This document shows positions 524 through 53,781 of a DNA stretch of 64,000 nt, one piece after another. Within the stretch, counting starts at the first letter, position 1; every line of letters begins with the position of its first letter. The DNA is taken from positions 186,001-250,000 of the IMG/VR virus record IMGVR_UViG_3300012988_000016, one strand, 5' to 3'. The translations under genes and the position numbers were made by a program. Below the pieces are notes generated by a model. That model was not told where the DNA came from. It was given only the letters and a program-made list of their open reading frames with translations, and did not search any database.

Positions 524-1245
524 TGTACCTGCGCAAGATCTACATCCGACACAGAGAACAATATCCAGACAGCCCCAATACTTTTGCGGCTTTGGACGGA
601 TTTACCCAACTAGGTGTTGAGGTACAGCCCTATTACGGTTTTGACGATATCCAAGCCTTGACCGATCTGGGCCCAGAGGTTGGGGTGACGGGCTTCGTAG
701 GAGATACGTGGGCCGCTCTAAAGGTCTTGGGTAAGCCGATGCCCATCCCCATCGATTACCCAGAGCAATTGACTCCTTGGTTGGGCCGTAAGATCTGGCG
801 AAGCACCCTGGGGGAGATACGGCGTTCGGTCGAGCAAGTGTTCATCAAGCCAGTGTCGGAAAAGCTCTTCACTGGCTTCATCTGGCGTTCCAATATGGGT
901 GACCAGATACGTATGGCGACTTGTGAGGACGATACCGAGATTTGGGTCTCGGAACCGATCTCCCTGGAGTCTGAGTACCGCTGTTTTATCCAAGATGGGG
1001 ATATTGTGGGAGTCCGCCACTACAAGGGAGATTGGGGCAAGGCGATCGATCGTCGAACCGTAGAAGCAGCGGTCTCAGCCTACAAGGACTGTCCCAGAGC
1101 ATTCTCACTAGATTTCGGGGTGACCAGCACAGGCCAAACTGTGTTGGTGGAAGTCAATGACGGGTATGCATTGGGGTCCTATGGACTCCCTTCCATCATC
1201 TACGCGAAGTTTATCGAAGCTCGCTGGGAGGAACTGACCCGATGA
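523..1245 (+). CDS. ATP-grasp domain protein (DUF4343/R2K-like)
   Basis: VFIKP, SEYRCFIQDGDIVG and FSLDFG...VLVEVNDGYALGSYG form the ATP-grasp pattern. Confidence 0.75.
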   Translation: MYLRKIYIRHREQYPDSPNTFAALDGFTQLGVEVQPYYGFDDIQALTDLGPEVGVTGFVGDTWAALKVLGKPMPIPIDYPEQLTPWLGRKIWRSTLGEIRRSVEQVFIKPVSEKLFTGFIWRSNMGDQIRMATCEDDTEIWVSEPISLESEYRCFIQDGDIVGVRHYKGDWGKAIDRRTVEAAVSAYKDCPRAFSLDFGVTSTGQTVLVEVNDGYALGSYGLPSIIYAKFIEARWEELTR

Positions 1246-1499
1246 ATGCCCTAACGATCGCCAGAGAAGAAGCGGCCAAGCTAGAGGTTAAGTTGGACGA
1301 CGCCACTCTGGAGTCCCTCGTCTGGGAGCAAACTGGATGGCCCGGCTTCTTTGCTGGTGACGATCCAGAGGCTGAGTTTCGGAGACAACTCCAAGCCGCC
1401 ATGCAGCCTATCGTCACAGCCCAGCGGTCTAGAGATCGACGAGAACTCCAGGAGAAACTCCCAACCAAATGGGAACTCCTCCTGGAGGACGATCAGTAA
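1242..1499 (+). CDS. Hypothetical protein with shared C-terminal motif
   Basis: ATGA-coupled to the upstream gene; ends LPTKWELLLEDDQ. Confidence 0.65.
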   Translation: MNALTIAREEAAKLEVKLDDATLESLVWEQTGWPGFFAGDDPEAEFRRQLQAAMQPIVTAQRSRDRRELQEKLPTKWELLLEDDQ

Positions 1500-1768
1500 C
1501 CTCGCATCATCTGCCACAAACGCATCACATCGCTGGCTCCGCCAAAGCCTTCGACAATACCTGAGCCCGCTTCCCTGAAGGCTTCGATGGTGGCCCACGC
1601 CACCTCGGCCGCACTAACGGCTTGTCGCTTGCGCCATTCGTCCTCGGTGCCAGCCTCGATGATGTGAAGCGGCACGCCGCCTGGCTTGAATAGAGGAGCC
1701 ACCTCAGCGGCAAAGACGGCCGCGTAGATGACTTGCTCTCCTTGGGTCAAGCGTTCAATCATCACCAC
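1493..1768 (-). CDS. Hypothetical protein
   Basis: 91-aa ORF coupled to the 1762-2949 gene. Confidence 0.55.
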   Translation of the reverse strand: MVMIERLTQGEQVIYAAVFAAEVAPLFKPGGVPLHIIEAGTEDEWRKRQAVSAAEVAWATIEAFREAGSGIVEGFGGASDVMRLWQMMRGY

Positions 1769-14633: not shown

Positions 14634-15119
14634 GTGTCGTCACCTGAGCTATCGTCTGAGCAGATCAAAGAGTTAAGGCAGACGATCCGAACCGTAGATA
14701 GAAGCTCAGACTACAGATGTCCTGATTGCGGAGGAAAAGTCTCCCTCCTGGCAGGCAAGTTCGGGCTGTTCTATCGCTGTTTGGACGGTTGGATCCAGTG
14801 GCGGAAAGCTAATTTTGACTTAACGGTTGAGACTTGCTCTGGCAAATTCAGCGCCAACAATGACGGAACCCCATTGGGGATCCCGGGCAATCGGGCCACC
14901 CGACAAGCCAGACAACGGATCCATCGTTTGCTGGAACGTCATCCTGATTTGTTTGATTGGCAGACCCTTGAGGCTGAACTGAGTGAAAAATTTACGGAAG
15001 CAGGCCGAACGTTCGGCCGTCTCTCGTGTATGTCGTTGGAGGACTGTCAACTAGTGCTTCGCCACCTCGAATACCGACCTACCATCTGGGAATTGCTGAG
15101 CGATTCTAGCAACCTATAG
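14634..15119 (+). CDS. Zn-finger protein (topoisomerase C4/DUF3268-like)
   Basis: CPDCGGKV.L..GKFGLFYRC...C and GTPLGIPG...RQARQRIH; ends RPTIWELLSD motif. Confidence 0.65.
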   Translation: MSSPELSSEQIKELRQTIRTVDRSSDYRCPDCGGKVSLLAGKFGLFYRCLDGWIQWRKANFDLTVETCSGKFSANNDGTPLGIPGNRATRQARQRIHRLLERHPDLFDWQTLEAELSEKFTEAGRTFGRLSCMSLEDCQLVLRHLEYRPTIWELLSDSSNL

Positions 15120-19397: not shown

Positions 19398-19443
19398 TGG
19401 TGGAGGATACACCAAAAATTCTTTTGCAAACTCTCAGATGGTC

Positions 19444-19449
19444 GGTGTA
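19444..19449 (+). promoter_or_regulatory. GGTGTA motif upstream of tracrRNA (putative promoter)
   Basis: Same motif as upstream of more than 30 genes; 12 nt before the anti-repeat; TTGCAA at 19424-19429. Confidence 0.55.
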
Positions 19450-19458
19450 TAGGAACAT

Positions 19459-19560
19459 CACGATCTAAAGGGGTCGCTAACCAGGTCCCCAGCTACCACC
19501 AAATATGCAAAGCTGGGCAAAGGGCCCCTAGGACCAACATCCTAGGGGCCTTTATTTTTC
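19459..19560 (+). ncRNA. tracrRNA
   Basis: 19462-19481 GATCTAAAGGGGTCGCTAAC pairs with repeat nt 1-19 (one U bulge, one G-U, one U-U mismatch); followed by CCCAGCT/AGCTGGG stem and GGCCCCTAGG/CCTAGGGGCC hairpin with T-rich tail; ends approximate. Confidence 0.85.
19521..19560 (+). terminator. Intrinsic terminator-like hairpin at tracrRNA 3' end
   Basis: AGGGCCCCTAGG-ACCAACAT-CCTAGGGGCCTT followed by TATTTTTC. Confidence 0.7.
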
Positions 19561-23803: not shown

Positions 23804-24421
23804 ATGCCTCCGCCCGACCCTCCTGCTTCAAGCCTACAGATAGACCTGAATGGCCTGATCACACCCTTCGGCGGGGGGCTGACCGGTCTCCCGCCTGGAG
23901 AGTTGTGGAACCTGTCGGGCGTCGGTAGTTTGGTCTATTCGGGGGAGTTCACCCAGCAGGTGTTCGATAGAATGATCGCCAGATGTGTTGGTGGGGTCAG
24001 GCCTGCCTTTGCGATCATGAATCGAACCGCCTACAACGAGTGTGTGATGAATGGCGGGTGTCAGAACACCATCACTCCGATGCCCTCAATCGAAGGCACC
24101 CACACTACTTCAGTCAGCTACGCGGGGATCCGTCTCTATGTCAACAATGAGACGTCCAATGTATCGATATTGCTGAGCAGTGACTTTGTTCAGCTGAGTA
24201 TCGCCCAAAGGATCGACCCGCCCTTCACCTCTGTCCCGATCACTGGATTCACCCGTTTACAATTGGAGTGGATGATACCATCCGGGGCTAGAGACGGCTT
24301 CGATGATAGTGTAGCGTTCCTCCATTCTCCTCAGGATTTCACCAAAATCATGTCTGAGCCGGTCCGACAGAGCAGGCTACAGATCCTGCGTGACGGTGAT
24401 GGGTTGAAAGCACAGGAATGA
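23804..24421 (+). CDS. Hypothetical protein with shared C-terminal motif
   Basis: Start moved to ATG 23804 (9 nt after GGTGTA 23789-23794); ends VRQSRLQILRDGDGLKAQE. Confidence 0.7.
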   Translation: MPPPDPPASSLQIDLNGLITPFGGGLTGLPPGELWNLSGVGSLVYSGEFTQQVFDRMIARCVGGVRPAFAIMNRTAYNECVMNGGCQNTITPMPSIEGTHTTSVSYAGIRLYVNNETSNVSILLSSDFVQLSIAQRIDPPFTSVPITGFTRLQLEWMIPSGARDGFDDSVAFLHSPQDFTKIMSEPVRQSRLQILRDGDGLKAQE

Positions 24422-24424
24422 CGT

Positions 24425-24955
24425 ATGCCCCCTTCTAGACCCACCATATCTCTAGCGGCAGATCGAGACGGCAACCTACTGATCACATCTATCAAGTACT
24501 TGAGAGAAGAACATCTGTGGCATTTGGGCGGCTTCACCCGACAAGTGTTGGAACAGCTGATCGATCGTAGCATCGATATCCCAGCATTTGTTTGGATCAC
24601 TCCAGAAGCATACAACGAATTAGCCAGTGATTCGGGGACGAATCCAAGCACTTACCGAGGTATGCCTATCCATGTCAACAGTGCGATAGATGAAGACAAC
24701 GTTACCGCCGTGTTGATGTCGACAGCCTACTGTCCGTTGGCTGTCGCCCACAGAAGAGATCCCCCACCTATTAGGCAATTCAATTTTCTCAGATCCAGTC
24801 TAGAGTTGGGGAGACCGCCATCGGTTCAAGAGGATTTGTTGAACCTACAAGCAGAAGCGACGCACTCGGAAGCGGTTGTCAAGCAAGCATTTGCTGAAGT
24901 GGTGCGTCAGAGCCGTCTACAGATCTTGCGTGATGGGGACGGTCTGGATGGCTAA
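24425..24955 (+). CDS. Hypothetical protein with shared C-terminal motif
   Basis: Ends VRQSRLQILRDGDGLDG. Confidence 0.7.
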   Translation: MPPSRPTISLAADRDGNLLITSIKYLREEHLWHLGGFTRQVLEQLIDRSIDIPAFVWITPEAYNELASDSGTNPSTYRGMPIHVNSAIDEDNVTAVLMSTAYCPLAVAHRRDPPPIRQFNFLRSSLELGRPPSVQEDLLNLQAEATHSEAVVKQAFAEVVRQSRLQILRDGDGLDG

Positions 24956-25595
24956 GCCCCACAAGCATTTCCGCCAACATCCAAAGCGTCTGGTGGGCAC
25001 GTTCTGGGTCAATGAGCGAGTACTAAAGGTCATCAAGATTTCCAAGCAGCGGGCTTGGTGTGTGGTGGTGCCTGGGCTGGAGATCATGCGGATAGATATC
25101 CAGGATCTGTTGCTCCAGTCGACCTACGTGGGACGAGAGATCCCCGATCGCAGTCGGAACAAGTATGTGGTGGCAAAGAATGGGGGATCCATTTCCGAAA
25201 TCTTGGGGATTACCGGTAATGAAGTTACTTTATCGGTTGTGCGTGGAGACTTATCTCAATTGAGCCCGCAGAACCTATGGGAGGGTTACCACATCTACCC
25301 TGTAGTAGGCTTCTTCGATGAATTCCGACATCCCACCGAAGCCGAGATACAAGATGGAGAAACTGTTTACCAACGATGGATGTTGTGGATACGAGCTGGT
25401 ATTCTAGAGCATGAGACGGAAATCAGAGAATTCTGTGACACCAGCTGGACAGCTCCTGAGGAACCCCCTGATGATAAGCCGGAACGAGCCCCAATCGTCG
25501 AAGTCCCAATTTCCCCCATTAGCCGTCAAAGCAGCTATCAGATCCTTCAGCAAGGGGACGGCCTAGACCCTACCAAGAAAGCCTCCGATGACTAA
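24948..25595 (+). CDS. Hypothetical protein, member of local paralog family
   Basis: PKRLVGTFWV N-terminus resembles the 32448 gene; ends SRQSSYQILQQGDGLD. Confidence 0.65.
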   Translation: MAKPHKHFRQHPKRLVGTFWVNERVLKVIKISKQRAWCVVVPGLEIMRIDIQDLLLQSTYVGREIPDRSRNKYVVAKNGGSISEILGITGNEVTLSVVRGDLSQLSPQNLWEGYHIYPVVGFFDEFRHPTEAEIQDGETVYQRWMLWIRAGILEHETEIREFCDTSWTAPEEPPDDKPERAPIVEVPISPISRQSSYQILQQGDGLDPTKKASDD

Positions 25596-26106
25596 GACCG
25601 GAATAGCCGCGCTAGATGATATGTTGCCCGATGGGATCCCTACCGGTATCACGACCGTGACAGGTGGTGGATGCAGAAGGTTCGCACAATATCTGCATGA
25701 CAGCGATCTTGCAGTTGAGAAAATCTGGAAGGACTACACGGATCTAGACTTCAAAAGTGCGGCACAGGATCTTAAGAGTTCGATTCAGCACGACTTCGAT
25801 GGGATGTTGTTCTGTAACGGATTGGTTGGAACCATTGCCGAATGGGTGAGCCTGCTCCCATCCTTGATAGTCAGGTCTAAGCACGGTTCTATTCTGATTG
25901 CAACAGAACGAACCTACAGGGCCAGCACCTATTATGCCAATCTATGGTTGAAAGTGGATTCTGGTGACGACAACACCTCTCTGATCACCATCAGAAAAAA
26001 CAGGAGCAGTGGGGTAAATGGTGAACAAGCTACTATGACCTATAGGAAACGTCTCGTTATCGAAAGAGTGTCGGCATGGTCCCGCTTTGATGAGATGACG
26101 ATCTAA
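25588..26106 (+). CDS. Degenerate RecA/KaiC/DnaB-like ATPase-fold protein
   Basis: TGIAALDDMLPDGIPTG opening and ITIRKNRSSG..GE ending, but the Walker A position reads GGGCRR. Confidence 0.5.
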   Translation: MTKTGIAALDDMLPDGIPTGITTVTGGGCRRFAQYLHDSDLAVEKIWKDYTDLDFKSAAQDLKSSIQHDFDGMLFCNGLVGTIAEWVSLLPSLIVRSKHGSILIATERTYRASTYYANLWLKVDSGDDNTSLITIRKNRSSGVNGEQATMTYRKRLVIERVSAWSRFDEMTI

Positions 26107-28532: not shown

Positions 28533-29176
28533 CGATCAAATGGTCTGAACTTTCGGTCACCGAGCTGACTCACGCCCTGAGAACGTTGCCTCGCATGATG
28601 CTATACAGCTGGATCGTGCGAGAAGAGGGATGGACCAGAGCCTCGGTTTGGGAGTATGCTGAAGAAGGTCAGCGCCCGCCACTCATCATCAAGGACGGTG
28701 GATTATTTAGGTCCTATTGGGACAAGGATGGTCTAAGGTTCGAGTCTCTCAATGAAGCACAGGCCCATTGGGATGCTGAATGGATAGAAATTGGATGGCA
28801 GCTGATCGACTCAGAGGACGGATCTTCCACCCCGTCTCCGCCGCCATCGCTTGATTGGGCTAGTCTGAGCCCTATCGAGCTAGCAGGAGCCATCCGGACC
28901 ATCCCACGCCTGATTGCCTATGCCTGGACGGTGGACCGACAGGGGATGTGGGTCAGGTGGGACGTCGAGGAATACGGATGTGCTCAGGCGGCCTGTATCG
29001 TGGAAGAGGACGGCCTCTTCAGGGGGCCTAGCCGTGACCATCTGACGGGCCTCGAATATCCCAAATTCGAGACGTTGGAGGCCTGCAAGCAAGCTTGCGA
29101 CAGAGAATTGGTCAGCCGAGGCTGGCTATTGAACGATTTGGAAGCGAGGCCGCCCGATGCCCAAACTGACGATTGA
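28529..29176 (+). CDS. Hypothetical protein with internal two-fold domain duplication
   Basis: WSELSVTELTHALRTLPR...GWQLID is repeated as WASLSPIELAGAIRTIPR...GWLLND. Confidence 0.7.
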   Translation: MTIKWSELSVTELTHALRTLPRMMLYSWIVREEGWTRASVWEYAEEGQRPPLIIKDGGLFRSYWDKDGLRFESLNEAQAHWDAEWIEIGWQLIDSEDGSSTPSPPPSLDWASLSPIELAGAIRTIPRLIAYAWTVDRQGMWVRWDVEEYGCAQAACIVEEDGLFRGPSRDHLTGLEYPKFETLEACKQACDRELVSRGWLLNDLEARPPDAQTDD

Positions 29177-29519
29177 GATCGACTACCCGCCGAATCTTTC
29201 TGCACATAACGCTGATGTGGTGGTTCAATCGCCCCTCTTCCGAGCTTACGTGAACGATGAGCTGTTGGCCTGTATCAAAAGCCTTCAGCTCAGTGTGGGG
29301 CCTTTGTCAAACGTCCCGACTGTGATGGTTTCCACCACTCATGAGGATTCGTTGGAAGGCGTCAGTGAAGATCTAAAGGCTCGCCTTGGCCGCTACAGGG
29401 AGCTGTTGGAAAGCCTGGGTCCTTATGTCATGCTGGCCTACGACGGCTTGACTCCTAGCGCTCCGCTAGAACCAGTGGAGCGTCGATCGGCCTGGCAGCT
29501 GATCAAGGATGGGGACTAA
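29157..29519 (+). CDS. Hypothetical protein with shared C-terminal motif
   Basis: Ends VERRSAWQLIKDGD. Confidence 0.65.
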   Translation: MPKLTIEIDYPPNLSAHNADVVVQSPLFRAYVNDELLACIKSLQLSVGPLSNVPTVMVSTTHEDSLEGVSEDLKARLGRYRELLESLGPYVMLAYDGLTPSAPLEPVERRSAWQLIKDGD

Positions 29520-30377: not shown

Positions 30378-31004
30378 TTACACCGGATCAGATCCTAGGT
30401 GTTGCCAGAGGGTTGGACGGTCGATTGGTGCCGAGGGAGCGGCCGGTACGACCGCCCTAGTGGGGGCAACAGGGTATGCTTCGTCGTCAGCATCCGTCGC
30501 CATAGAGTCATTCCTGTGGTCATCCATAGGGATAGGGCTACCGCCCACATGTTGGATAAACGCCTGCATAAGGTCGTCTCGAAGACGCTCCTCAACAGCG
30601 AGCGACGGATCGGTCCAGCCATGTGTGAGGATCGGGTTACGGTTACGGATCCTTCGTCTCAACGCCATTTCAAAGTACTGGACCAATAATGAGGGGTCAT
30701 CGACGGGCCTTTGGAACAGCCTACCCCCATCTCTGAACTGATAACGCCACATACCATCATCACCCAGAAACACCCCCACCTCCCTTTCATCAGAGGAATT
30801 TTGGACCGTTATCCGAAACCTAATCTGACACCCATTATTGACTATGTGGAATCCGTTTCCCTCCACATTCTCAAGAGGGACCCCCATCCTGACCACTACT
30901 TCTTGCAGCAACGCTTCCACCTGTGGTCGGCACCTAGCTTCAAGCTCGGTTGAGCGTTCCATACGGAATTTGGCCAATTCATCCAGATCGGTAAAAATAC
31001 TCAT
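30378..31004 (-). CDS. Hypothetical protein with shared C-terminal motif
   Basis: Ala/Pro linker, then IDRPTLWQHLGSDPV. Confidence 0.65.
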   Translation of the reverse strand: MSIFTDLDELAKFRMERSTELEARCRPQVEALLQEVVVRMGVPLENVEGNGFHIVNNGCQIRFRITVQNSSDEREVGVFLGDDGMWRYQFRDGGRLFQRPVDDPSLLVQYFEMALRRRIRNRNPILTHGWTDPSLAVEERLRDDLMQAFIQHVGGSPIPMDDHRNDSMATDADDEAYPVAPTRAVVPAAPSAPIDRPTLWQHLGSDPV

Positions 31005-31228
31005 CAGATCTCCAGGTCCGCTGGGCGTTGTCGATACACCAACTGGCAGGATTCACAATGCCAGCCAAGGATGTGGTGCTGTTGTGGGGGCCCTCCATAT
31101 TTGGGACCTAGCGGGCCATGCCGGATCCCTATCGTGGCCACCACTTTTCCGCTACAGAGGCGGCACACGCCTGGTTTGGGGGCGTACTGGCCACGTAGGC
31201 GACGTCGGTCCTCCATATCGTTCTTCAT
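31004..31228 (-). CDS. Small Zn-ribbon protein
   Basis: CRLC...CESC. Confidence 0.55.
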   Translation of the reverse strand: MKNDMEDRRRLRGQYAPKPGVCRLCSGKVVATIGIRHGPLGPKYGGPPQQHHILGWHCESCQLVYRQRPADLEI

Positions 31229-31818
31229 GGGATTGGAGTCTCAGGAGCGATTAATTGCCAGAGGGATGTCCGTGAGGGCGTTTCTGTTTGTGCCTCAGGT
31301 GCGACTTCAGGTTGAAGATCTGCCACCGCTACTTCAAACTGTTGTTCTTCCAACAGTTCTTCAGGAGTGGCACGGCGGTAAGTTTGCAAGAATTCAGAGA
31401 TTGGCGGTCGATCTACCGACATTTGCTCAACGCCTTGTCGTTGTCTGGACTCTAGACTGATACTGCCGATTGCGACAAAGTTGATTCTCCACACGCCATT
31501 GAGGGAGGGGTCTTCTGACGGCACCCTCCGCACGACAGGCATTCTAGGTCTCAACCAAGCCATTTCTTCAAAAGTACCCAAATACTTGGCACCATACAAC
31601 AAAGCTTCAATTGGCTCCCACCAATGATTGGGGGGATGACGGGACTGCGGTTCCAGTGCCTCGTAACGAATGACATGCACCTCACGTTCTCGGACATCCA
31701 ATATCTGGACATTATCCCACAGAAATGCAGCCTGATTTTGCCTCAACATGGCCCAAATCGTATCCACCAACGTTTGTGGGTCATCCGAGAAGCCTTGAAG
31801 ACGTTCATTCAGTGGCAT
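31225..31818 (-). CDS. Hypothetical protein, local paralog family
   Basis: PQTLVDTIW...VQILDVRERE; ends SRTSLWQLIAPE. Confidence 0.7.
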   Translation of the reverse strand: MPLNERLQGFSDDPQTLVDTIWAMLRQNQAAFLWDNVQILDVREREVHVIRYEALEPQSRHPPNHWWEPIEALLYGAKYLGTFEEMAWLRPRMPVVRRVPSEDPSLNGVWRINFVAIGSISLESRQRQGVEQMSVDRPPISEFLQTYRRATPEELLEEQQFEVAVADLQPEVAPEAQTETPSRTSLWQLIAPETPIP

Positions 31819-32410
31819 GGGGTTCCTTCAGCAAATCCCATGCAGATATTCGTGAGATGGGTGATGATGGTTCAAGGCTTTCTGGAGGGATTGGTCCTGA
31901 ATCTGGAGAGGGCAAGGGCCGTGCCAAAAATTGGTTTAGGTGCTCTCGGTAAGCGAGGTGTTCCTCTCTAGTAGCCGGCCTATATGTCGTCAGAAATAGA
32001 TGCGTTCGACAATTTGCGCCCAACAAATAGTCTCTACCAGATGGTTTGTCTCTAAACCATACTGAATTTCCGTGGACACCTTCGATCTGCCAGGTTCGTC
32101 GAAGTTCATCCTCAGTAGCTACTATAGTAGTGACCATAGCGCCTGAAATAACCCACCCTGCTTCCTGATGGGTTCCTATATAGACACCACCCCATACGAT
32201 CGATTCGACTACAACCCACCAATGAGTAGGCTCAGTACGAAAATTCCAATGGACAGCCGTCAACACCACATGAGCTCGACGCTCTCTAACGTCCACTATC
32301 TTGACATATTCGGTATTCAGGCCGTCGCCCACATTGACCACCCAATAGGTATCGACCAATGTCTGAGGAGTGTTCAAGAATTGGTGACGTTGCTCTTCAC
32401 TCAGGGGCAT
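31805..32410 (-). CDS. Hypothetical protein, local paralog family
   Basis: Start moved to ATG 32410; PQTLVDTYW...VKIVDVRERR; ends SRISAWDLLKE. Confidence 0.7.
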   Translation of the reverse strand: MPLSEEQRHQFLNTPQTLVDTYWVVNVGDGLNTEYVKIVDVRERRAHVVLTAVHWNFRTEPTHWWVVVESIVWGGVYIGTHQEAGWVISGAMVTTIVATEDELRRTWQIEGVHGNSVWFRDKPSGRDYLLGANCRTHLFLTTYRPATREEHLAYREHLNQFLARPLPSPDSGPIPPESLEPSSPISRISAWDLLKEPHATE

Positions 32411-32447: not shown

Positions 32448-33173
32448 ATGAAGGTCCGTTCCAATCTGTCGATTGACGAACAGGTAGAGCTACAGTTGCG
32501 AGCTAGCCCAAAGAGGCTGGTGGGGTCTTGGTGGGTGGTGTCGGGCACCTTGAGGAAGGTGGTACATCTAACTAAGAAGCGAGTCATCATGGTGATGGCC
32601 AGCAATATAGAGGCTGAACCTTTGAAGATCCCGCTGCATCAGCTCTTCACAGATGAATGTATCTTCCTAGGATATGGTTTCATCCGTCCGCACCAGTTCG
32701 TGACCGATGTCAGAAATGGCTGGATGTTTCGAACCGATAGATACGATCCCGAGACCATTTGGCTAGATCTGGTTAGCAGCAACGCCACCTCAACTTTGCT
32801 CCAGCAGTCTAGCTACGATCTGCCAGGGGTCTATTGGGTACGTATCATGGATTTCGTGCAGTTTTTTAGAACCGTGCCAAACCAACTGGATGGGGTCAAC
32901 CAATGGGAAAACATCCGTGCGGCATACGCGGACCGATTAGGGAACTTGGATCAGCTATATAGCCAGGATCGAGATGCGACGACATCCCAGCGGACTGTCA
33001 CCTATTATGCGTATTCAATCCCTATTCAGGTGTCGCCACCATTGACGTCTGTGCCGACGCCCGCTACCCCTACAGAACCAGCCTCAGAACTGGTCAGACC
33101 TACTTTTGCGGATCATCTGTTGGGGACGGAGAGTGCGTGGTTGGTTCCTCATCAGGATGGATCAAACCCATAG
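32448..33173 (+). CDS. Hypothetical protein, local paralog family
   Basis: SPKRLVGSWWV; Pro/Thr linker, then VRPTFADHLL. Confidence 0.65.
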   Translation: MKVRSNLSIDEQVELQLRASPKRLVGSWWVVSGTLRKVVHLTKKRVIMVMASNIEAEPLKIPLHQLFTDECIFLGYGFIRPHQFVTDVRNGWMFRTDRYDPETIWLDLVSSNATSTLLQQSSYDLPGVYWVRIMDFVQFFRTVPNQLDGVNQWENIRAAYADRLGNLDQLYSQDRDATTSQRTVTYYAYSIPIQVSPPLTSVPTPATPTEPASELVRPTFADHLLGTESAWLVPHQDGSNP

Positions 33174-39113: not shown

Positions 39114-39587
39114 ATGAAGCACGCAATCGAAACCCTCCGCCGTGAGGCTATGGCGCTCTACAGGGCGTTGCCTGGCGAGGGTTGGGCAGACACTAGAGAG
39201 CTACGAGAGTCGATGCTGCAGTCGATTGCTCAGCACTACGAGGCCGCCACCATCCTGGAATCTAAAGTCATAGCTTCGAGCCAGGAAACATTGACGCTAG
39301 ATATAGGTACCTTCTTAGGACTGAAGCGGCGAGATCCCTACCAAGACGTTGAGGCCTACTACGAGGGGCAGGACGCCTTGGCTAGACACAAAGATCCTGA
39401 GGTGACAGGTCCGATATGCAACTGTGGGGAATATTTCCGCCAAGATAGGCGCCACATGCCTGACTGTCCGATGCTACCTCGGACTCCTGACGGCCGCATC
39501 AACAACTGTTCGCTGGCCAACCACGACCTTGAAGCCAACTGTCAGATGTGTGATGGAAAGTGCCCTGATCGGGCTAATTTGCCATGA
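39114..39587 (+). CDS. Hypothetical protein with Cys/His-rich C-terminus
   Basis: CNC...H..DC...C...H...C..C...C. Confidence 0.6.
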   Translation: MKHAIETLRREAMALYRALPGEGWADTRELRESMLQSIAQHYEAATILESKVIASSQETLTLDIGTFLGLKRRDPYQDVEAYYEGQDALARHKDPEVTGPICNCGEYFRQDRRHMPDCPMLPRTPDGRINNCSLANHDLEANCQMCDGKCPDRANLP

Positions 39588-39835
39588 ATGCCGTTTTGGA
39601 GCAACTCATAGGAGAGCGGGACCCAATGGAAAACGTCTACGTTTGCTACAACGTTTTCGGCATGAGTAGAAGAGATGGCCCCTATACGTGGGAGCAAGCG
39701 CTGCGGGAGATGCAGGACATCTCCACCTACCTGGGTGTGTCGGATTGTACCTTCTTGATCGAAGGTCCTCAGGTGAAGCAAAATACCATCCACATTCCAA
39801 CCTTTGCCCAGCGGTTGGACGAACCGTTTATCTGA
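39584..39835 (+). CDS. Hypothetical protein with shared C-terminal motif
   Basis: Ends IPTFAQRLDEPFI. Confidence 0.6.
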   Translation: MNAVLEQLIGERDPMENVYVCYNVFGMSRRDGPYTWEQALREMQDISTYLGVSDCTFLIEGPQVKQNTIHIPTFAQRLDEPFI

Positions 39836-43703: not shown

Positions 43704-44189
43704 ATGTCCCACATCCATCCTCTGCTGATCATCTATGTTGTTCTGGCGTTGGGGGCGGTATCTTGCTTCTATGCTGCAGACAGACTGTTCTTCCACGGCT
43801 TCTTTGGACCCAAGGTGAAGGTCCCTAAGAATGTGGGTCGGAAGCACTACAGCGACCTACGTATCGTCTTTCCAAGAGCGGTGTTAGACGCCAATACATT
43901 CACCCAGATGCGTCTCAGACGGGCCCGAGCAGATGTCAGAGCTCCTTCGGAAGCTCAAGAACAATGGCGACTACAGTACTCTACCGTTCCGACACAATTT
44001 GCAGTGCGGACTGGACAAGAAATTCATGACGCCATCCAGACTATGTTGGCGGCTGAGTTGGGTACGGATCAACATAGTCTGCAGACCAACCCTTCGAATC
44101 CAGAAGTGAAGGTAAAAGAACCTCCCGAACCTCCCAAATCCAAGCGTTCGGCCGACCACTTGTTGGACAATGATTGGAAGATCAAGTGA
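43704..44189 (+). CDS. Membrane-anchored hypothetical protein with shared C-terminal motif
   Basis: N-terminal TM segment; ends PPKSKRSADHLLDND. Confidence 0.6.
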   Translation: MSHIHPLLIIYVVLALGAVSCFYAADRLFFHGFFGPKVKVPKNVGRKHYSDLRIVFPRAVLDANTFTQMRLRRARADVRAPSEAQEQWRLQYSTVPTQFAVRTGQEIHDAIQTMLAAELGTDQHSLQTNPSNPEVKVKEPPEPPKSKRSADHLLDNDWKIK

Positions 44190-44677
44190 CACAAGAGAAG
44201 GTTGAGCGGCCCACTTACTTTAGCCTAGAGGTATCGACTGAGGTGGCGGCAGAGGTGTGGCGTTCCCTGAAGGATTGCGTTGATGTTAGTGAAAAAGAGC
44301 AATTCCTCGATAGTTTGGCCCACATTCTCAGCTCTAAGCTGGAAGACGCTTTCGAGATTGGGGTCCTGTTGGCTAGACACAATTTCTATGTTGACGAAAA
44401 CCTGATCGTGGGCTTGGTCAATGCCGACATTTACCACACTAGGAAGAGAGTACTGTCGTGCATGTTGAGCTGGTGGGTCCACTACCACGCTCCAAAGCCT
44501 ACCCTATCGGTAGGGACATGCGTGATCTACAAGGGAGATGTCAGGGTTGTGGATCGCTACGACCTAATTCGAAATCAGAACCAAATCGTATCGATCGACT
44601 ATGATCGAGCCGTCTATGTGTGTAGTGACGGGCGTCAACTGCTTTGGGAAGACACCAGTTATCTGGTGGTTGGCTGA
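44174..44677 (+). CDS. Hypothetical protein
   Basis: 167-aa ORF. Confidence 0.55.
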   Translation: MEDQVTQEKVERPTYFSLEVSTEVAAEVWRSLKDCVDVSEKEQFLDSLAHILSSKLEDAFEIGVLLARHNFYVDENLIVGLVNADIYHTRKRVLSCMLSWWVHYHAPKPTLSVGTCVIYKGDVRVVDRYDLIRNQNQIVSIDYDRAVYVCSDGRQLLWEDTSYLVVG

Positions 44678-45048
44678 CCGATAGGGTCTTCCGTCAGATG
44701 ATCCCAAGCAGACCTAGGCTCAGTTGTTGGTCCGGCGATTGGAACCAATCTTGAGACCTGTAGTTGTGGGGGAGGCACGAATGGCATCCACATCCCTCTA
44801 GAGTTATCGCAGCTCAACGGTCTGAGAGGGGAGGTTGGACTGTAGATAGGTACGACTCGGCCAAAGCTAACAGCTATTGCGGTAGCACTAACCTGCATAT
44901 TGGTGAAAGAGGGGTAGGACCCCTCTTGATGGATCTGAGCCAAATGGTCCGTCAGGCTCAGAAAGGCGGCCGTCAGCCTAGTGACACTGTCGGTCAACTC
45001 CGACACCTGGGCTTCCAATACCCTGATCCGTTCTTCTTCGTGGGGCAT
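44659..45048 (-). CDS. Hypothetical protein with shared C-terminal motif
   Basis: Start moved to ATG 45048 (overlaps upstream stop); ends EPRSAWDHLTED. Confidence 0.6.
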   Translation of the reverse strand: MPHEEERIRVLEAQVSELTDSVTRLTAAFLSLTDHLAQIHQEGSYPSFTNMQVSATAIAVSFGRVVPIYSPTSPLRPLSCDNSRGMWMPFVPPPQLQVSRLVPIAGPTTEPRSAWDHLTEDPIGQPTTR

Positions 45049-45566
45049 CAGTCGTCCAAGAAACGGTCCAGCAGTTGCTTGAAAATAGACGGTTTGGAAG
45101 CTAGGCGCTTCTGTTCTTTGGCTTCCCTTAGGCGAACCCGCTTCTCGGTCTTCTCTATCTGTTGCTTGACTGCTGAGGGGTTGACGTGAGGGTCCACTCG
45201 CCAGAGTTTCCAAGCTGATTCGATCTGCACCAATACAAAGCTATCGGTCTGCATTTGACTCAGCTTCTTGAGACTCGTATGATGCAATGTTTGCCCTTGT
45301 CGAGGGTGTGGGCTATCCACCAATCGACGCTTGTACCAATAACTAGAGGAAGCGTCTAATGCGATGCTGAATTGATAGCTAGGCTCGGGTCTAAACCTCT
45401 TCCGGAAGTTAGGCCTATAGGGTTCTATCACCAAAAAGCCTTTTTCGAAGCTATCGATCAAGTGTCGAGGGATCTCCAAAACCAGCGTCTCCGAATCACG
45501 CTCAATAACGGTTCGAGGAGCTCCATATTCTGGCGGAGCTTTGGAGAGTGGGATCAGGTAGGACAT
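45048..45566 (-). CDS. Hypothetical protein
   Basis: Ends KPSIFKQLLDRFLDD. Confidence 0.6.
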   Translation of the reverse strand: MSYLIPLSKAPPEYGAPRTVIERDSETLVLEIPRHLIDSFEKGFLVIEPYRPNFRKRFRPEPSYQFSIALDASSSYWYKRRLVDSPHPRQGQTLHHTSLKKLSQMQTDSFVLVQIESAWKLWRVDPHVNPSAVKQQIEKTEKRVRLREAKEQKRLASKPSIFKQLLDRFLDD

Positions 45567-48123: not shown

Positions 48124-49116
48124 TCAGAATGCTGAGCTCTGGATTACCCAGAAATCGCTAGCCAGTTTGGTGTTTTTGAGATAATCGTAACTCACCCAGT
48201 AGTAGCCAGCCAAGCCCCAAGCTGATCCCCAGCTGTTACGAACCAAGAATGCGCCCTTGGAAGCTGAATTGAACGGGTTAACCATTTGGTCGTCATACCC
48301 GACCAAGCATTGAGCGTGACCGCCCTGCAGAGTTTCTGACTTGCCTGGGATGTTCAGGAAGCCGTTCTTGGCCATATCAGCCGACATGAAGTAGCTGTAG
48401 ACCTGGAAGCCGTAGCCAACCAAATAGCCGGCAGCTAGTGTGGCTTTCATGGTCGCCAAGTCACCATCTGCGATCGAATGATACGATGTGACCTTGTGCG
48501 TCAGAGCTGTGGTCCACAAGGCAGCTGGCGGGTTGGTGGCGAACTTCGAGATATTGTACGGCCATGAGGCTTCATCCACCACACCGTATTGAGCCGCAGC
48601 TTTGACGGTATCGCGGATGGTAGCTCCGGAATCCTCAGAGACGGTCCCCTCGATCTTCCGCGTGGCGTAGTACTCAAACAACCGGCTTACTTGCACCAAC
48701 TTGGCTGGCGTCGGAGTTGGGGAGGGTGATGGGGTTGGAGCTGGAGTGGGAGCTGAGGTGGTCTTGATGGTAGTGGTGAAGGTAATGGTGCCATCAGCCG
48801 CTACTGAGACGTTCGAAACACTGACATTGGCTGTGGCGGCACCCAACTGAGCCAACGAAGTTTTGGCCAACCCACGGTTCTCATTGGCTTCCACCATACC
48901 AGCCAACATGTTGGCCGTACAGCTGCCTAGGTCGCCCTGATCTTCAACTGGACTACAGATGGAACGCAAGTCTACCGAGGCGGGAGCGGCACCAAACACT
49001 CCTGAGGGTAGTTTGAGGCGATAGTCTTCATCTCGGGTGTCGGTAGGCTGTTTCTTCCAACCACCTAGGTGAACCTGGCGTGGCGAACCATTCGCATGAT
49101 GAGCTGTCTTGAGCAT
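48124..49116 (-). CDS. C1 (papain) family cysteine peptidase
   Basis: VDLR...VEDQGDLGSCTAN (Gln/Cys), GGHAQCLVGYDD (His) and VRNSWG (Asn). Confidence 0.92.
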   Translation of the reverse strand: MLKTAHHANGSPRQVHLGGWKKQPTDTRDEDYRLKLPSGVFGAAPASVDLRSICSPVEDQGDLGSCTANMLAGMVEANENRGLAKTSLAQLGAATANVSVSNVSVAADGTITFTTTIKTTSAPTPAPTPSPSPTPTPAKLVQVSRLFEYYATRKIEGTVSEDSGATIRDTVKAAAQYGVVDEASWPYNISKFATNPPAALWTTALTHKVTSYHSIADGDLATMKATLAAGYLVGYGFQVYSYFMSADMAKNGFLNIPGKSETLQGGHAQCLVGYDDQMVNPFNSASKGAFLVRNSWGSAWGLAGYYWVSYDYLKNTKLASDFWVIQSSAF

Positions 49117-51304: not shown

Positions 51305-53486
51305 TGAGTCGATCGACCATGTATTGCGTCCGGCAGGACGGGTTTGTTGCGCCTTACCTGTATCTTCAGAACAGTAATGGTACTGGCCCCGTTGTGTGGA
51401 CCACATTGGTCGAACGTTACGGGTTACGTCCTCTACCAGGAAAATGGGACCCATGGGAAACCCTATTTCAAGTGGTAGAGGACGGCTCCCTAAAGCTAGA
51501 GTGGTGGGAACACAATACCCTCTGGTGGACTTACGATTACGCGATGCTGAGACGGGAAGACTTTCAAGCGATGGCCGATTCGTTTCGGATTTTTGCTGAA
51601 CGTCAGAAACAAGACCGTATCTCGCACGGCCCTGAGATGGCGGAAGCGCTTGAGAGGATGCTGATGTTCGAACCTGATATCTTGGCAGCCTGCATCCGAG
51701 TCACCGATCTGTCGGACAATTTATGGGTCAGCTACAACCCAGAGACCGATGAACGAGATCTTAATTACAACCTCCACACAGGCAACAAGCATCAATACAT
51801 CGAGGTTCGACGTCCGTGAGTGATGAGGACGATACGGAAGAATTGAATTCCAAAGCCCGTCCCGAGACAGGGCCAATGAAGTTTCTTGGAGACTGGTGTG
51901 GGACCTTCATTCGAGGTGATGCTTCGTTTGCCTACGCTCGTTCACTTGAAGTTTTGATGGATCCGAAGGCAGATGAGATCTCACTAACGATCGCCAAAAT
52001 GGTGTTGGCCAACCTTCTCCAATCCCTGAATGATTCAGACGAATCTAGATTTGCGCCAATGCAGCAGATGTATGAATACCATCGCTGCAAACGTCAAAAA
52101 CGATGAAATCCTTCACGCCAGGACAATTGGTCCAAGTGCAGCGTCAGCCAGCCGCCAAGTGGGAACCGGCTACCTATCTAAGACCACACGAGGATTGGCC
52201 TGGTAGCCATTTGGTTGATCTGCCTGATGGGGCGGAACGGTGTATTGATCGAATGTTGGGTGGCGATTGTGACCCCAATCACCCCCGAGCCTGTAAAGTC
52301 AAAGTGCTGATGGTACCTGCCCGACGAATCCGTAATCCCACATGACCGATCAACACATACCCTGTCAAAGATGTGCCGACTACAGATCCAGAGCCATCTG
52401 GACTATGGCGCTAAATTGCAAGTCCTGCGAAGGGACTGGAATCGTCCGAAATCCAGCCTCATATGTGTGCAACCAATGTGGTGGAGGGTTGTGTGAGGAC
52501 AGTGAGGGTCAGTGGCCTAGCGGATTGACCGACGCCACCGTCTCAGGCGGCTATAGCTCCTTCCACCTCATGGACTGCACCCGCTACCGTTTCTCCCTAT
52601 GCGAGAAATGCCTGAGAAACTTCTTCACGGCCTTCAAGATCCCTCCCGAGGTTTTTTGCCACATAGGCGGGGGAATCGAGACGTACGAGAGTGACTTGGA
52701 TCTCTACCACCACCGTCTTTGGGAAAAGGCTGGGGGCGACATCAAACGATTGCTTGAGGGCGGATGTAACTGGCGAGAGAACTGTCAGGAACCAGCCATC
52801 TACCGTCTGATGGGCTTAGGTGGCAACTTGCGGTCGGAGGCCCGCTGTGAGGCCCATAAGTGGTGCAGTGTAGGGCTATGCGACCGTGTGGCACCGTTCC
52901 AGATGGTACCCTTCCTCGAAGCTGTCACGGAAGAACAACAACAGGCGGTCAGCCAAGCATGGGGATCGGGAGAAAAGATACCAGATGAGCCGGAGTTATC
53001 AGAACCAGACTAACATCTTGGCCGAGCTGTCTTTCCTCAAACCGGAACCAGGTGTGAAGAAGGTAACCGAGTACGGTACTGAGGAGTTGCGTCAATTCGC
53101 CCGTGGATTGTTGGTTAGACAGTGTCCAGAATGCGGGTCAAAAGCGTCAATTCCTCATTACCAGAACGGACGCAACACTTGTTTGGATTGTGATACCATC
53201 TATCGCCCCGAAGATGTGGTGGTGATTGCCTTGCTGAAAGCTTTCCAGTCCGGCGCTGAAGATGAGGCGGAACGGCTCAATCCGTCGGCTTAAGTTCGCA
53301 GGCCTCTAAGATCTCGGCCTTTTCTTCCACCACAGACACCACGTGAGCGTATATCTGCTGGGTGTAACAAAGGCCGCTGTCATCCATCACCAGGCCTAGG
53401 TGGATTGCAGTTTTGCTGCAGATGGGGCAGCAGACCAACGGCATCCCTTCAAACGTCTCACCAGGCTCAAGGTCTCGTAGATCCAT
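51304..53486 (+). other. Run of small hypothetical genes (51304, 51816, 52103, 52342 and 52985 plus; 53277 minus)
   Basis: Coupled ORFs; 52342 and 52985 contain CxxC pairs. Confidence 0.55.
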
Positions 53487-53526
53487 CCCCCATCATATCA
53501 CGGTTTTTAGATACTGGAAATCCTAG

Positions 53527-53781
53527 ATGTCAGCCCCAACTAATCTGCGGAACCTAAAGGTAGGAGATCAGGTGGTGGTGACTTGTCCAGAATTTGAGAA
53601 GAGTGAGTTCTCTGTTCTGGGAGAAATAGTCTCGGTCCACCGCCTAAATAGCGGCTACAAGGTTCGTCCTATGAGTCATCAGAATATCAAGTTTTCGTGG
53701 GGGTACTCAGAACTGAGACTCCCCACCAGAGAAGAGGTCTACCGTCCTAGCTTCTCTGAACGCCTATTCGAGAGTTTCTGA
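53527..53781 (+). CDS. Hypothetical SH3-like protein with shared C-terminal motif
   Basis: LKVGDQVVV...ELRLPTREE; ends YRPSFSERLFESF. Confidence 0.6.
   Translation: MSAPTNLRNLKVGDQVVVTCPEFEKSEFSVLGEIVSVHRLNSGYKVRPMSHQNIKFSWGYSELRLPTREEVYRPSFSERLFESF

What the first reader, a model, noticed from the sequence alone, without database searches (positions are those of the whole stretch)
1242..53781. Shared C-terminal peptide motif on about 16 unrelated proteins
Seen: many small genes end, often after a Pro/Ala/Thr-rich linker, in [R/P]-x-[S/T]-phi-[W/Y/F/L/A]-[EQD]-[LHIR]-L-x-x-[DE]. Examples: 1242 LPTKWELLLED; 14634 RPTIWELLSD; 23804 and 24425 VRQSRLQILRDGDGL; 24948 RQSSYQILQQGDGL; 25588 RVSAWSRFDE; 29157 RRSAWQLIKDGD; 30378 RPTLWQHLGSD; 31225 RTSLWQLIAPE; 31805 RISAWDLLKE; 32448 RPTFADHLL; 39584 IPTFAQRLDE; 43704 KRSADHLLDND; 44659 PRSAWDHLTED; 45048 KPSIFKQLLD; 53527 RPSFSERLFE. 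The two identical 15-aa copies (near 24362 and 24902) differ at 9 of 15 codons, all synonymously, so conservation is at the protein level. Inference: a portable tag binding one common partner. It could serve as a virion-packaging/ejection signal, a localisation signal for a phage compartment, a degron, or a docking peptide for a host hub protein. I know of no description of it.
Basis: partly seen in the sequence, partly recalled or inferred. Interest (0 to 1): 0.8.

Follow-up and report, generated by a model that had tools for sequence, protein, structure and literature searches.

The report
Shared C-terminal docking tag, huge phage
About one in ten small, otherwise unrelated proteins of a huge soil phage end in the same short helix-forming peptide on a flexible linker, which looks like a previously undescribed address or docking tag for one common, still unknown partner.

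Summary
All 16 peptides sit 0-16 residues from the stop of an ORF. A motif regex hits 15 protein tails against 2 internal sites. In leave-one-family-out scoring, the left-out tag ranks first of about 18,870 ten-mers for 8 of 11 families. Four more tags lie outside the window in the same phage. The window belongs to a tailed phage of at least 360 kb from soil. Six of the 16 proteins fall into two paralog families, which leaves about 12 independent families. Two instances are weak (43704, 45048). Distant homologues (27-37% identity) in other phages keep the tag while the linker diverges. One relative uses a drifted version ending in DPF. A complete 485-kb relative (601 genes) and 24 other huge-phage loci have essentially none. 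AlphaFold models the tag as a short helix capped by the conserved Ser/Thr, after a disordered linker. The motif is [PVI]-x-R-x-[ST]-x-W-[EQD]-x-L-x-[DE]. It matches no known clamp, PIP, sorting-signal or free-C-terminus degron rule. Best reading: a portable docking peptide for one lineage-specific receptor, probably phage-encoded. My leading guess is cargo loading into the capsid, as with T4 capsid-targeting sequences. The partner and the function remain untested.

The parts
1242..1499 (+). 85-aa ORFan. Tag LPTKWELLLE at 1458-1487, 3 residues from the end.
   Evidence: Left-out rank 1 of 18,866. No Pfam or PHROG match.
14634..15119 (+). 161-aa protein with a weak zinc-ribbon match. Tag RPTIWELLSD at 15075-15104.
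   Evidence: Left-out rank 1.
23804..24421 (+). 205-aa ORFan, paralogue of 24425. Tag RQSRLQILRD(GDGL) at 24365-24394.
   Evidence: Synonymous codon differences from its paralogue. Left-out rank 13.
24425..24955 (+). 176-aa ORFan, paralogue of 23804 (33% identity). Tag RQSRLQILRD(GDGL) at 24905-24934.
24948..25595 (+). 215-aa member of the PxxLVxTxW (tandem beta-barrel) family. Tag RQSSYQILQQ(GDGL) at 25524-25553.
   Evidence: Its orthologue in phage B (37% identity) carries RISSWERLDGNL.
25588..26106 (+). 172-aa protein whose N-terminus looks like a degenerate KaiC/RecA-type motif by my reading of the sequence (no family match). Tag RVSAWSRFDE at 26065-26094.
   Evidence: The sister strain has RVSAWARLDE. 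Left-out rank 12.
29157..29519 (+). 120-aa ORFan. Tag RRSAWQLIKD(GD) at 29481-29510; the protein ends with the tag.
   Evidence: Left-out rank 1.
30378..31004 (-). 208-aa ORFan with a Pro/Ala-rich linker. Tag RPTLWQHLGS at 30390-30419.
   Evidence: Left-out rank 1.
31225..31818 (-). 197-aa member of the tandem beta-barrel family. Tag RTSLWQLIAP at 31243-31272.
31805..32410 (-). 201-aa member of the tandem beta-barrel family. Tag RISAWDLLKE at 31823-31852.
   Evidence: AlphaFold model, pLDDT 78.8: folded domain, disordered linker 163-189, helix 190-194 = AWDLL with Ser189 as cap. Weak tandem Tudor/Agenet-like fold matches. Left-out rank 1.
32448..33173 (+). 241-aa member of the same family. Tag RPTFADHLLG at 33096-33125, followed by a second partial copy TESAWLVP.
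   Evidence: Left-out rank 2.
39584..39835 (+). 83-aa ORFan. Tag IPTFAQRLDE(PFI) at 39794-39823.
   Evidence: Left-out rank 1.
43704..44189 (+). 161-aa protein with an N-terminal hydrophobic (transmembrane or signal-like) segment. Doubtful tag KRSADHLLDN at 44142-44171, lacking the aromatic position.
   Evidence: PWM score below 9. May be a chance match.
44659..45048 (-). ORFan, 129 aa if it starts at the ATG that overlaps the upstream stop (the longest ORF runs to 45213). Tag PRSAWDHLTE at 44689-44718.
   Evidence: Left-out rank 1.
45048..45566 (-). 172-aa basic protein. Weak tag KPSIFKQLLD at 45066-45095.
   Evidence: Left-out rank only 150, so membership is uncertain.
53527..53781 (+). 84-aa ORFan. 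Tag RPSFSERLFE(SF) at 53743-53772. A second gene just outside the window carries RPSFSERLLDSFI.
   Evidence: Left-out rank 1.

Best explanation
The motif is a portable C-terminal docking peptide. It forms a short amphipathic helix, with Ser/Thr as helix cap, Trp and Leu as hydrophobic anchors, Arg before it and an acidic residue after it. It is held on a flexible, often Pro/Glu-rich linker behind small folded domains.

At least 19 accessory proteins from about 14 unrelated families in this huge tailed phage carry it, as do more in its relatives. I infer that all of them are tethered to one common receptor. Because the motif is confined to one phage lineage and drifts with that lineage, the receptor is probably phage-encoded.

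The use I think most likely is cargo loading. The tag would dock these proteins onto the inside of the assembling capsid (scaffold or shell). They would then be packaged and delivered with the DNA as early-acting or counter-defence proteins. [quoted passage not shown]

Shown: the motif, its position, its enrichment, its conservation, its lineage restriction and its predicted helix-on-linker structure. Inferred: binding to one receptor, that the receptor is phage-encoded, and capsid loading.

My own breakdown: docking peptide about 0.85; phage-encoded receptor about 0.55; capsid loading about 0.3.
For: - Position and enrichment.
- Independent instances outside the training window.
- Protein-level selection, shown by synonymous codon differences and mixed codon use.
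- Conservation in homologues at 27-37% identity with diverged linkers.
- One orthologue pair differs: the phage B protein ends in the variant RPALARLIEGIGI, which the window's 28529-29176 lacks.
- Lineage restriction: 0 of 601 genes in LR745208.1 and 1 weak hit in about 600 genes of 24 loci.
- A relative with similar GC content uses a drifted tag (phi-x-x-[IL]-x-[EQS]-D-P-F), while a relative at 62% GC keeps the canonical form. So the tag tracks phage lineage rather than GC content, and by proxy host. This is weak evidence for a phage-encoded partner.
- Structure: a folded tandem-barrel domain, a disordered linker, and a 5-residue helix starting right after the conserved Ser.
- Context: the tagged genes are small ORFans in a roughly 100-kb accessory region of a tailed phage (tail-fibre match). 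They lie next to a methyltransferase-helicase with P1 DarB-like domain content and next to strain-variable Cas9 or type I-C cassettes.
- Precedent: T4 capsid-targeting sequences are short portable peptides shared by otherwise unrelated internal proteins, and giant-phage heads hold more than 50 gene products, many of them ejected (PMC5694885; PMC10052503, abstract).
Against: - No binding, localisation or virion data exist.
- The capsid, scaffold and protease genes of this phage were not reached.
- T4-type targeting peptides are N-terminal and are cleaved off. Here the tag is C-terminal and no fixed protease site precedes it (my reading of the alignments).
- If the density seen here held genome-wide, dozens of small proteins would have to be packaged.
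- One weak instance (43704) sits on a protein with a membrane-like N-terminus, which would not fit capsid loading.
- The DarB-like protein's own C-terminus resembles the tag, but it is conserved in lineages that have no tags, so it cannot be counted as support.
Confidence: 0.35

Rival explanations
1. Tether to a shared effector or hub. Each tagged protein would be a small binder whose C-terminal peptide docks it, and whatever it binds, onto one enzyme or hub of the host or the phage. Candidates are a protease, a chaperone (the window encodes a J-domain protein) or a modifying enzyme. The tag would then act as an adaptor tether or a regulated degron. The precedents are the C-terminal ClpX-binding peptide of SspB and the C-terminal PRANC/F-box of poxvirus ankyrin proteins.
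For: - The architecture of binder domain, flexible linker and C-terminal peptide is that of known adaptor tethers (own knowledge).
- The folds are binder-like: weak tandem Tudor/SH3-like barrel matches and a weak zinc-ribbon match.
- The tagged genes sit among defence and counter-defence genes.
- Ser/Thr is invariant two residues after the Arg (15 of 15), so the site could also be a phospho-switch.
- A papain-like peptidase (48124-49116) and a C-terminal J-domain protein (16794-17852) are encoded in the window.
Against: - The tag matches no known hub-binding rule tested.
- A universally conserved host hub would not explain why the tag is absent from related huge phages.
- It would also not explain why the tag drifts in a relative of similar GC content.
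- The distance to the C-terminus varies from 0 to 17 residues, which excludes degrons that need the free carboxylate.
- R2K ATP-grasp ligases are also present in the tag-less LR745208.1, so they are not specifically linked to the tag.
Confidence: 0.3
2. Localisation signal for a phage-built compartment, condensate or factory other than the capsid. Client proteins would be recruited to a scaffold through a shared short motif, as the Rubisco-binding motif recruits proteins to the algal pyrenoid.
For: - There are many clients from unrelated families.
- The motif sits on a disordered linker.
- Some tagged proteins carry peptide-binding-type folds as well as the motif, which could build a multivalent network (inference).
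Against: - Every DNA-acting enzyme in the window lacks the tag: Cas9, three methyltransferases, HU, integrase and the Eco29kI-type enzyme. This argues against a replication or nucleus-like compartment.
- The tag helix in the tandem-barrel protein is modelled at only about 60 pLDDT, so there is no sign that it docks on that domain.
- No compartment gene was identified.
Confidence: 0.15
3. Sliding-clamp (or other replisome hub) binding motif. From memory, the tag resembles the C-terminal clamp-binding peptide of the RB69 DNA polymerase (KKASLFDMFDF).
For: - The pattern basic-x-S-x-aromatic-acidic-hydrophobic-hydrophobic is shared with that peptide (own recollection, not tested).
- One tagged protein has a weak zinc-ribbon match.
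Against: - 0 of 15 tags fit the beta-clamp rule Q-phi-x-[LM]-(x)-[FL] or the PIP box (rule taken from PMC11139829).
- The related phage LR745208.1 encodes a bacterial DnaX-type clamp loader, which implies a beta-type clamp.
- None of the tagged proteins is a recognisable replication or repair enzyme.
- Dozens of small ORFans would be an unusual client list for a clamp.
Confidence: 0.05
4. Not a functional tag. The similarity would come from chance, from common descent of the proteins, or from a conserved DNA or RNA element at gene ends.
For: - Six of the 16 proteins belong to two paralogue families.
- Two instances are weak.
Against: - Leave-one-family-out ranks are first for 8 of 11 families.
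- Tail hits outnumber internal hits 15 to 2.
- Control genomes give zero hits.
- Codon usage differs throughout the tags, and the tags lie on both strands.
- The tag survives where the linker has diverged beyond alignment.
Confidence: 0.02

Closest known systems
T4 capsid-targeting sequence on internal proteins (IPI-III, Alt, gp67/68)
   Same: A short conserved peptide shared by small, otherwise unrelated, fast-evolving phage proteins. It is portable to foreign proteins. It delivers cargo into the prohead so that it is injected with the DNA (PMC5694885).
   Different: The T4 sequence is N-terminal, 10-20 residues long, and is cut off by the prohead protease. The tag here is C-terminal, has a different sequence and no fixed cleavage site. 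Packaging is not shown here.
Encapsulin cargo-loading peptides
   Same: A short C-terminal peptide behind a flexible linker docks unrelated cargo onto the inner face of an HK97-fold shell (own knowledge). The architecture is the same as here.
   Different: The consensus sequence is different (Gly/Ser/Leu-rich, from memory). Each encapsulin system has only a few cargo proteins. No shell gene is linked here.
Bacterial microcompartment encapsulation peptides
   Same: An amphipathic helix on a poorly conserved linker, at a terminus of several unrelated enzymes, acts as an address tag (own knowledge).
   Different: Those helices are longer, about 18 residues. The cargo proteins are metabolic enzymes. 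No shell-protein domains appear among the Pfam results for the window.
Rubisco-binding motif of pyrenoid proteins
   Same: One short Trp- and Leu-containing motif, often C-terminal, targets many unrelated proteins to one structure by binding one abundant partner (own knowledge).
   Different: That system is eukaryotic and has a different motif ([DN]W[RK]xx[LIVA]). Its partner is known.
Phage P1 Dar proteins (DarA, DarB, Hdf, DdrA, DdrB, Ulx)
   Same: Several unrelated proteins, including a large methyltransferase-helicase, are packaged in the head and co-ejected to protect the DNA from restriction (PMC12810830). The window encodes a methyltransferase-helicase of similar domain content beside the main tag cluster.
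   Different: No shared peptide signal is mentioned for the Dar proteins in the passages I read. No sequence similarity to P1 was found: P1 was not among the tblastn hits.
Adaptor tethers and viral F-box-like modules (SspB C-terminal ClpX-binding peptide; poxvirus PRANC)
   Same: A variable binder domain plus a constant C-terminal element that plugs into one effector machine (own knowledge).
   Different: The sequences differ. No effector is identified here.

Membership tests
T4-type capsid-targeting sequence | Short conserved peptide shared by otherwise unrelated small phage proteins | tested here: met
T4-type capsid-targeting sequence | N-terminal propeptide of 10-20 residues | tested here: not met
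   All tags lie 0-17 residues from the C-terminus. There is 1 regex hit in the N-terminal 30-mers.
T4-type capsid-targeting sequence | Prohead-protease cleavage site next to the signal | tested here: inconclusive
   Glu is common in the linkers but at no fixed distance from the tag. The protease of this phage is unknown.
T4-type capsid-targeting sequence | Carriers are found inside virions | not testable with these tools
   The phage is uncultured and there are no proteomics data.
Encapsulin cargo-loading peptide | C-terminal short peptide behind a flexible linker | tested here: met
Encapsulin cargo-loading peptide | Family consensus sequence and an adjacent HK97-fold shell gene | tested here: not met
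   The tag consensus is R-x-[ST]-x-W-[EQD]-x-L, unlike the Gly/Ser/Leu-type consensus I recall. No shell gene lies near the tagged genes in the window. The phage's own capsid gene was not reached.
Bacterial microcompartment encapsulation peptide | Microcompartment shell-protein genes in the locus | tested here: not met
   No such domains appear in any Pfam result for the window or its flanks.
Beta-clamp binding motif | Q-phi-x-[LM]-[FL] or Q-phi-x-[LM]-x-[FL] (PMC11139829) | tested here: not met
   0 of 15 tags match.
PIP box (PCNA/gp45-type clamp) | Q-x-x-[LIM]-x-x-aromatic-aromatic | tested here: not met
   0 of 15 tags match.
Exosortase/sortase-type C-terminal sorting signals (PEP-CTERM, IPTL-CTERM, LPXTG) | Motif followed by a transmembrane helix and a basic tail, plus an N-terminal signal peptide | tested here: not met
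   The tags are followed by 0-17 mostly polar or acidic residues, with no hydrophobic segment. Only the doubtful 43704 has a hydrophobic N-terminus.
Free-C-terminus signals (ssrA-type degrons, SSB tip, PDZ/Tsp ligands) | Fixed position at the extreme C-terminus | tested here: not met
   The distance from the motif to the end varies from 0 to 17 residues. One homologue has 56 residues after the tag.
Type VII secretion signal | Y-x-x-x-[DE] after a helical hairpin | tested here: not met
   Here the acidic residue is at +5 from the aromatic residue, not +4, in most tags (table). The carriers are not helical hairpins.

The most novel reading that the evidence does not exclude
The tag is the constant end of a phage-wide adaptor system. 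Dozens of small, fast-evolving binder proteins would each grip a different host protein, for example a defence factor. All of them would plug through the same C-terminal peptide into one effector machine, such as a protease, chaperone or modifying enzyme. That would make it a bacterial-virus counterpart of the F-box/PRANC strategy of poxviruses. Nearly as novel: the tag is a zip code that sorts about a tenth of a huge phage's proteome into a phage-built structure.
Probability: 0.12. Interest if true: 0.9.

Novelty: new variant of a known kind. Interest (0 to 1): 0.7.

Why it matters
Huge phages are mostly made of small genes with no known function. A shared tag groups about one in ten of them in this lineage into a single functional class that shares one fate. 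It also gives a direct experimental handle. A 12-14-residue peptide can be used for pull-downs, co-folding screens and reporter fusions to find the receptor. If the tag loads cargo into capsids, it would be a compact, transferable packaging signal for a new phage group. It would also mark a large set of candidate injected counter-defence proteins. If it docks onto a host or phage effector, it would reveal a new takeover strategy.

Tried and rejected
- Megablast of the window against the phage and plasmid collections gave no match.
- There are no tRNA genes and no Rfam matches.
- Pfam and PHROGs scans of the tagged proteins gave nothing significant.
- The word-indexed protein search with 31805 found only the protein itself. 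The exhaustive HMMER search was needed to find homologues.
- The family pattern and the CRISPR repeat found nothing in bacterial genomes, so there is no host clue.
- ESM Atlas look-alikes for a tagged protein and for the tag region alone were uninformative.
- No repeated 12-16-mers outside the CRISPR array were available for jumping across the phage genome.
- Tagged and untagged proteins do not differ in charge or pI.
- A de novo search for tail similarity in other huge-phage loci showed only one small set of tandem genes sharing a C-terminus (L024, likely paralogues).
- I fetched the whole of LR745208.1 hoping for a tagged relative of known function. It has no tags.
- Rejected ideas:
  - Membrane-targeting helix: the tag is too short, acidic and sequence-specific.
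  - R2K ligase substrate mark: these ligases are also present in a tag-less phage.
  - The DarB-like C-terminus as a tag: it is conserved in tag-less lineages.
- I did not reach the capsid or replication genes of this phage. About 119 kb of at least 360 kb was read.


Full report
**What the window is.** The 64-kb window has no close match among GenBank phages or plasmids. The same DNA occurs on metagenome contigs of up to 359,681 bp and on IMG/VR contig UViG_3300012988_000016 of 308,895 bp. The window starts at position 186,001 of that IMG/VR contig. The samples are soil metagenomes. The gene content is that of a huge tailed phage:
- many tiny ORFans;
- two R2K ATP-grasp genes, PTH2, CoaE, HU and NT5C;
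- three DNA methyltransferases and an Eco29kI-type nuclease;
- a tyrosine recombinase;
- a 1,224-aa methyltransferase-helicase;
- a Cas9 with its CRISPR array.

Just outside the window there is a 2,446-aa protein with a strong tail-fibre match. I call this phage W.

**Checking the observation.** Every one of the 16 peptides is present and ends 0-16 residues before a stop codon. The coordinates in the finding are gene coordinates; the tags sit at the gene ends. A regex written from the instances hits 15 tails. It hits 2 of 16,528 internal positions and 1 N-terminal 30-mer. Shuffled tails give 0.5 on average. Because that regex is post hoc, I ran two non-circular tests.

First, I built a PWM without each family in turn. 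The left-out tag ranks first among about 18,870 ten-mers for 8 of 11 families. The remaining ranks are 2, 7, 12, 13, 29 and 150.

Second, I applied a PWM trained on the window to DNA outside it. Across the 118.6-kb stretch of W that I could assemble, the count is 19 tagged genes: 16 PWM hits at gene ends, 4 of them outside the window, plus three window genes that my crude gene caller dropped. There is one internal hit, a helicase DEAH-box region. The same PWM gives 0 C-terminal hits in the 601 genes of LR745208.1, a complete 485-kb related phage. It gives one weak hit in about 600 genes from 24 other huge-phage loci.

The two identical 15-residue copies differ at 9 codons, all synonymously. 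Across all tags, Arg, Ser and Leu are spelled with many different codons, on both strands.

**Corrections to the observation.** Six of the 16 proteins belong to two paralogue families. These are (23804, 24425) and (24948, 32448, 31225, 31805); the second family shares an N-terminal PxxLVxTxW domain. The rest show no similarity to each other. That leaves about 12 independent families in the window and about 14 in the W DNA I read. Two instances are weak: 45048 has a left-out rank of 150, and 43704 has no aromatic residue and a membrane-like N-terminus. Only about half the linkers are clearly proline-rich. Overall Pro is 2.3-fold and Glu 1.5-fold enriched.

**Anatomy of the tag.** With the aromatic residue at position 0, the alignment of 15 tags gives:

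| Position | Residues | Count |
|---|---|---|
| -6 or -5 | hydrophobic (V/I) | often |
| -4 | Arg | 11 of 15 |
| -3 | Pro most common | 7 of 15 |
| -2 | Ser or Thr | 15 of 15 |
| 0 | Trp (otherwise L, A, Y, F, S) | 8 of 15 |
| +1 | Gln, Glu or Asp | 13 of 15 |
| +3 | Leu, Ile or Phe | 15 of 15 |
| +5 | Glu or Asp | 11 of 15 |

I built an AlphaFold model of the 31805 family from nine diverse sequences (mean pLDDT 78.8). It shows a folded domain of beta-barrels plus helices, an unstructured stretch at 163-189, and a short helix at 190-194 (AWDLL) that begins right after the conserved Ser189. So S/T-x-x-[E/D/Q] reads as a helix-capping box. Trp and Leu are then the exposed hydrophobic face, with Arg before and acid after. 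That is the typical build of a peptide that plugs into a groove on another protein. The folded domain resembles tandem Tudor/Agenet/SH3-type barrels only weakly (E 9e-4, TM 0.28-0.40).

**Evolution.** The word-indexed search found no relatives of a tagged protein. The exhaustive profile search found five distant ones. All carry the tag after a linker of different length and sequence:
- RISSWERLDGNL
- RTSSWERLTADD
- RRPAWDRIDRDED
- PRSAWEHLP
- KPVSVFHHIRQDPF

Two of these lie side by side in a 466-kb phage, B, whose methyltransferase-helicase is 65% identical to W's. B has four adjacent tagged genes in the syntenic position, two of them with no W homologue. B's orthologue of W 28529-29176 ends in the variant RPALARLIEGIGI, which the W protein lacks.

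A third phage (L011, contig of 174 kb, GC 55%) uses a drifted form, phi-x-x-[IL]-x-[EQS]-D-P-F, on at least four proteins. A small contig at 62% GC keeps the canonical form. In a sister strain of W (96% nucleotide identity) one tag reads RVSAWARLDE instead of RVSAWSRFDE.

The tag is therefore old, under selection, can be gained or lost, and is confined to one lineage of huge phages.

**What it is not.** None of 15 tags fits the beta-clamp rule or the PIP box (clamp rule from PMC11139829). The tag is not an exosortase- or sortase-type signal, because no hydrophobic segment or basic tail follows it. It is not a signal that needs the free C-terminus, because its distance to the end varies from 0 to 17 residues, and is 56 in one homologue. 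It is not a DNA-level element. The C-terminus of the methyltransferase-helicase (SIGRQLWALINEE) looks similar. However, it is conserved in lineages that have no tags (GLSIGKQLWNMI and similar). It is therefore a feature of that family and I do not count it.

**Mechanism.** The supported core is that this is a portable docking peptide. That it binds one common receptor is an inference from its uniform sequence on unrelated carriers. Three observations point weakly to a phage-encoded receptor:
- the tag is absent from related huge phages;
- it drifts in a relative of similar GC content but is kept in one of different GC content;
- I recall no host protein family that uses it; this was not searched.

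For the purpose, I rank capsid cargo loading first, at about 0.3. T4 gives an exact precedent in principle: small, unrelated, hypervariable proteins share a short portable targeting peptide and are injected with the DNA (PMC5694885). Giant-phage heads hold more than 50 proteins (PMC10052503, abstract). The domain-linker-C-terminal-peptide layout is that of encapsulin cargo. The main tag cluster also lies beside a methyltransferase-helicase of P1 DarB-like domain content and beside strain-variable Cas9 or type I-C cassettes, which is where counter-defence genes would be expected.

Against this: the tag is C-terminal with no fixed cleavage site, the number of carriers is large, and I have no virion data.

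Nearly as likely, at about 0.3, is a tether to one effector or hub, acting as an adaptor or a regulated degron. The binder-like folds and the invariant Ser/Thr after Arg would fit that.

A compartment signal (about 0.15) is weakened because Cas9, the three methyltransferases, HU, the integrase and the nuclease all lack the tag. A clamp motif is unlikely (about 0.05).

**Novelty.** Searches of the literature for a shared C-terminal motif in phage or jumbo-phage proteins found nothing relevant. A 2026 review of jumbo phages does not mention one. The principle of a short address or docking peptide on unrelated proteins is known. This sequence, its C-terminal position in a phage, and its scale of about a tenth of the genes in a 100-kb accessory region are new to me. 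I rate it a new variant of a known kind.

**Limits.** I read about 119 kb of a phage of at least 360 kb, and 20 kb from each of two relatives. The capsid, scaffold, protease and replication genes of the tag-bearing phages were not reached. No tool here could co-fold the tag with candidate receptors. The host is unknown.

Noticed in passing
window 19573-23717: A 1,020-aa Cas9 (HNH and RuvC domains) is followed by a CRISPR array. The array has at least 9 copies of the 36-nt repeat GTTGTGACCCCTTTTGATCTCTCGATCCATTCTCCC at a spacing of about 72 nt (22741-23350). Degenerate repeat copies continue to 23717 and could include a tracrRNA anti-repeat. The repeat has no exact match in the bacterial genome collection.
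   Followed up: partly
L001 1-6400 versus window 19416-25575: A sister strain (96% nucleotide identity elsewhere) lacks the Cas9-CRISPR cassette and two tagged genes. In their place it carries a different cassette with a ResIII helicase and several ORFans. Phage B has type I-C cas genes (Csd1, Cas7) and a TnpB-like gene at the corresponding place. This looks like a strain-variable island.
   Followed up: partly
window, genome-wide; for example 43695, 27161, 23789, 14619: The hexamer GGTGTA occurs 58 times, against about 31 expected. 26 of those copies lie 0-13 nt upstream of a called start codon, with a sharp peak at 9-10 nt. No permutation of the hexamer exceeds 7. At divergent gene pairs it forms TACACC-N-GGTGTA palindromes. 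It could be an unusual ribosome-binding signal or a -10-like promoter element for short leaders.
   Followed up: partly
window 33901-37575 (-): A 1,224-aa DUF6094 methyltransferase plus SF2 helicase is conserved (36-65% identity) in at least 20 huge-phage contigs and is always next to a roughly 279-aa partner (38006-38845). Its C-terminal helix, G-[LM]-S-[IV]-G-[KR]-[QE]-L-[WY]-x-[LM]-I, is conserved across lineages and resembles the tag.
   Followed up: partly
window 523-1245 and 6689-7495: Two paralogous R2K-type ATP-grasp (RimK-like peptide ligase) genes. Homologues are present in the L011 phage (58% identity) and in LR745208.1.
   Followed up: no
window 16794-17852: A 352-aa protein with a J domain at its extreme C-terminus and an N-terminal 300 residues of unknown function. 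It is a possible chaperone-recruiting adaptor.
   Followed up: no
window 33096-33173: The 32448 protein carries a full tag (RPTFADHLL) followed by a second partial copy (TESAWLVP).
   Followed up: no
window 48124-49116 (-), 26130-27158 and 57464-58303 (-): A papain-family peptidase, a PA14-domain protein in the middle of the main tag cluster, and a tyrosine recombinase. All are unusual cargo for a lytic-looking huge phage.
   Followed up: no
L024 19372-21297: In an unrelated high-GC huge phage, five tandem small genes (82-126 aa) share the C-terminus VVPLADELLE-x-EARR. They are probably tandem paralogues, but could be another lineage-specific tail motif.
   Followed up: no
L052 25816-27702 (LR745208.1 420816-422702): The DnaX-type clamp-loader gene of the 485-kb phage LR745208.1 contains an intein (HINT/intein-splicing domains inside the AAA+ module).
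   Followed up: no
window 44659-45213 (-): The longest ORF overlaps the upstream gene by 165 nt. An ATG at 45048 overlapping the upstream stop codon gives a more likely 129-aa product.
   Followed up: partly
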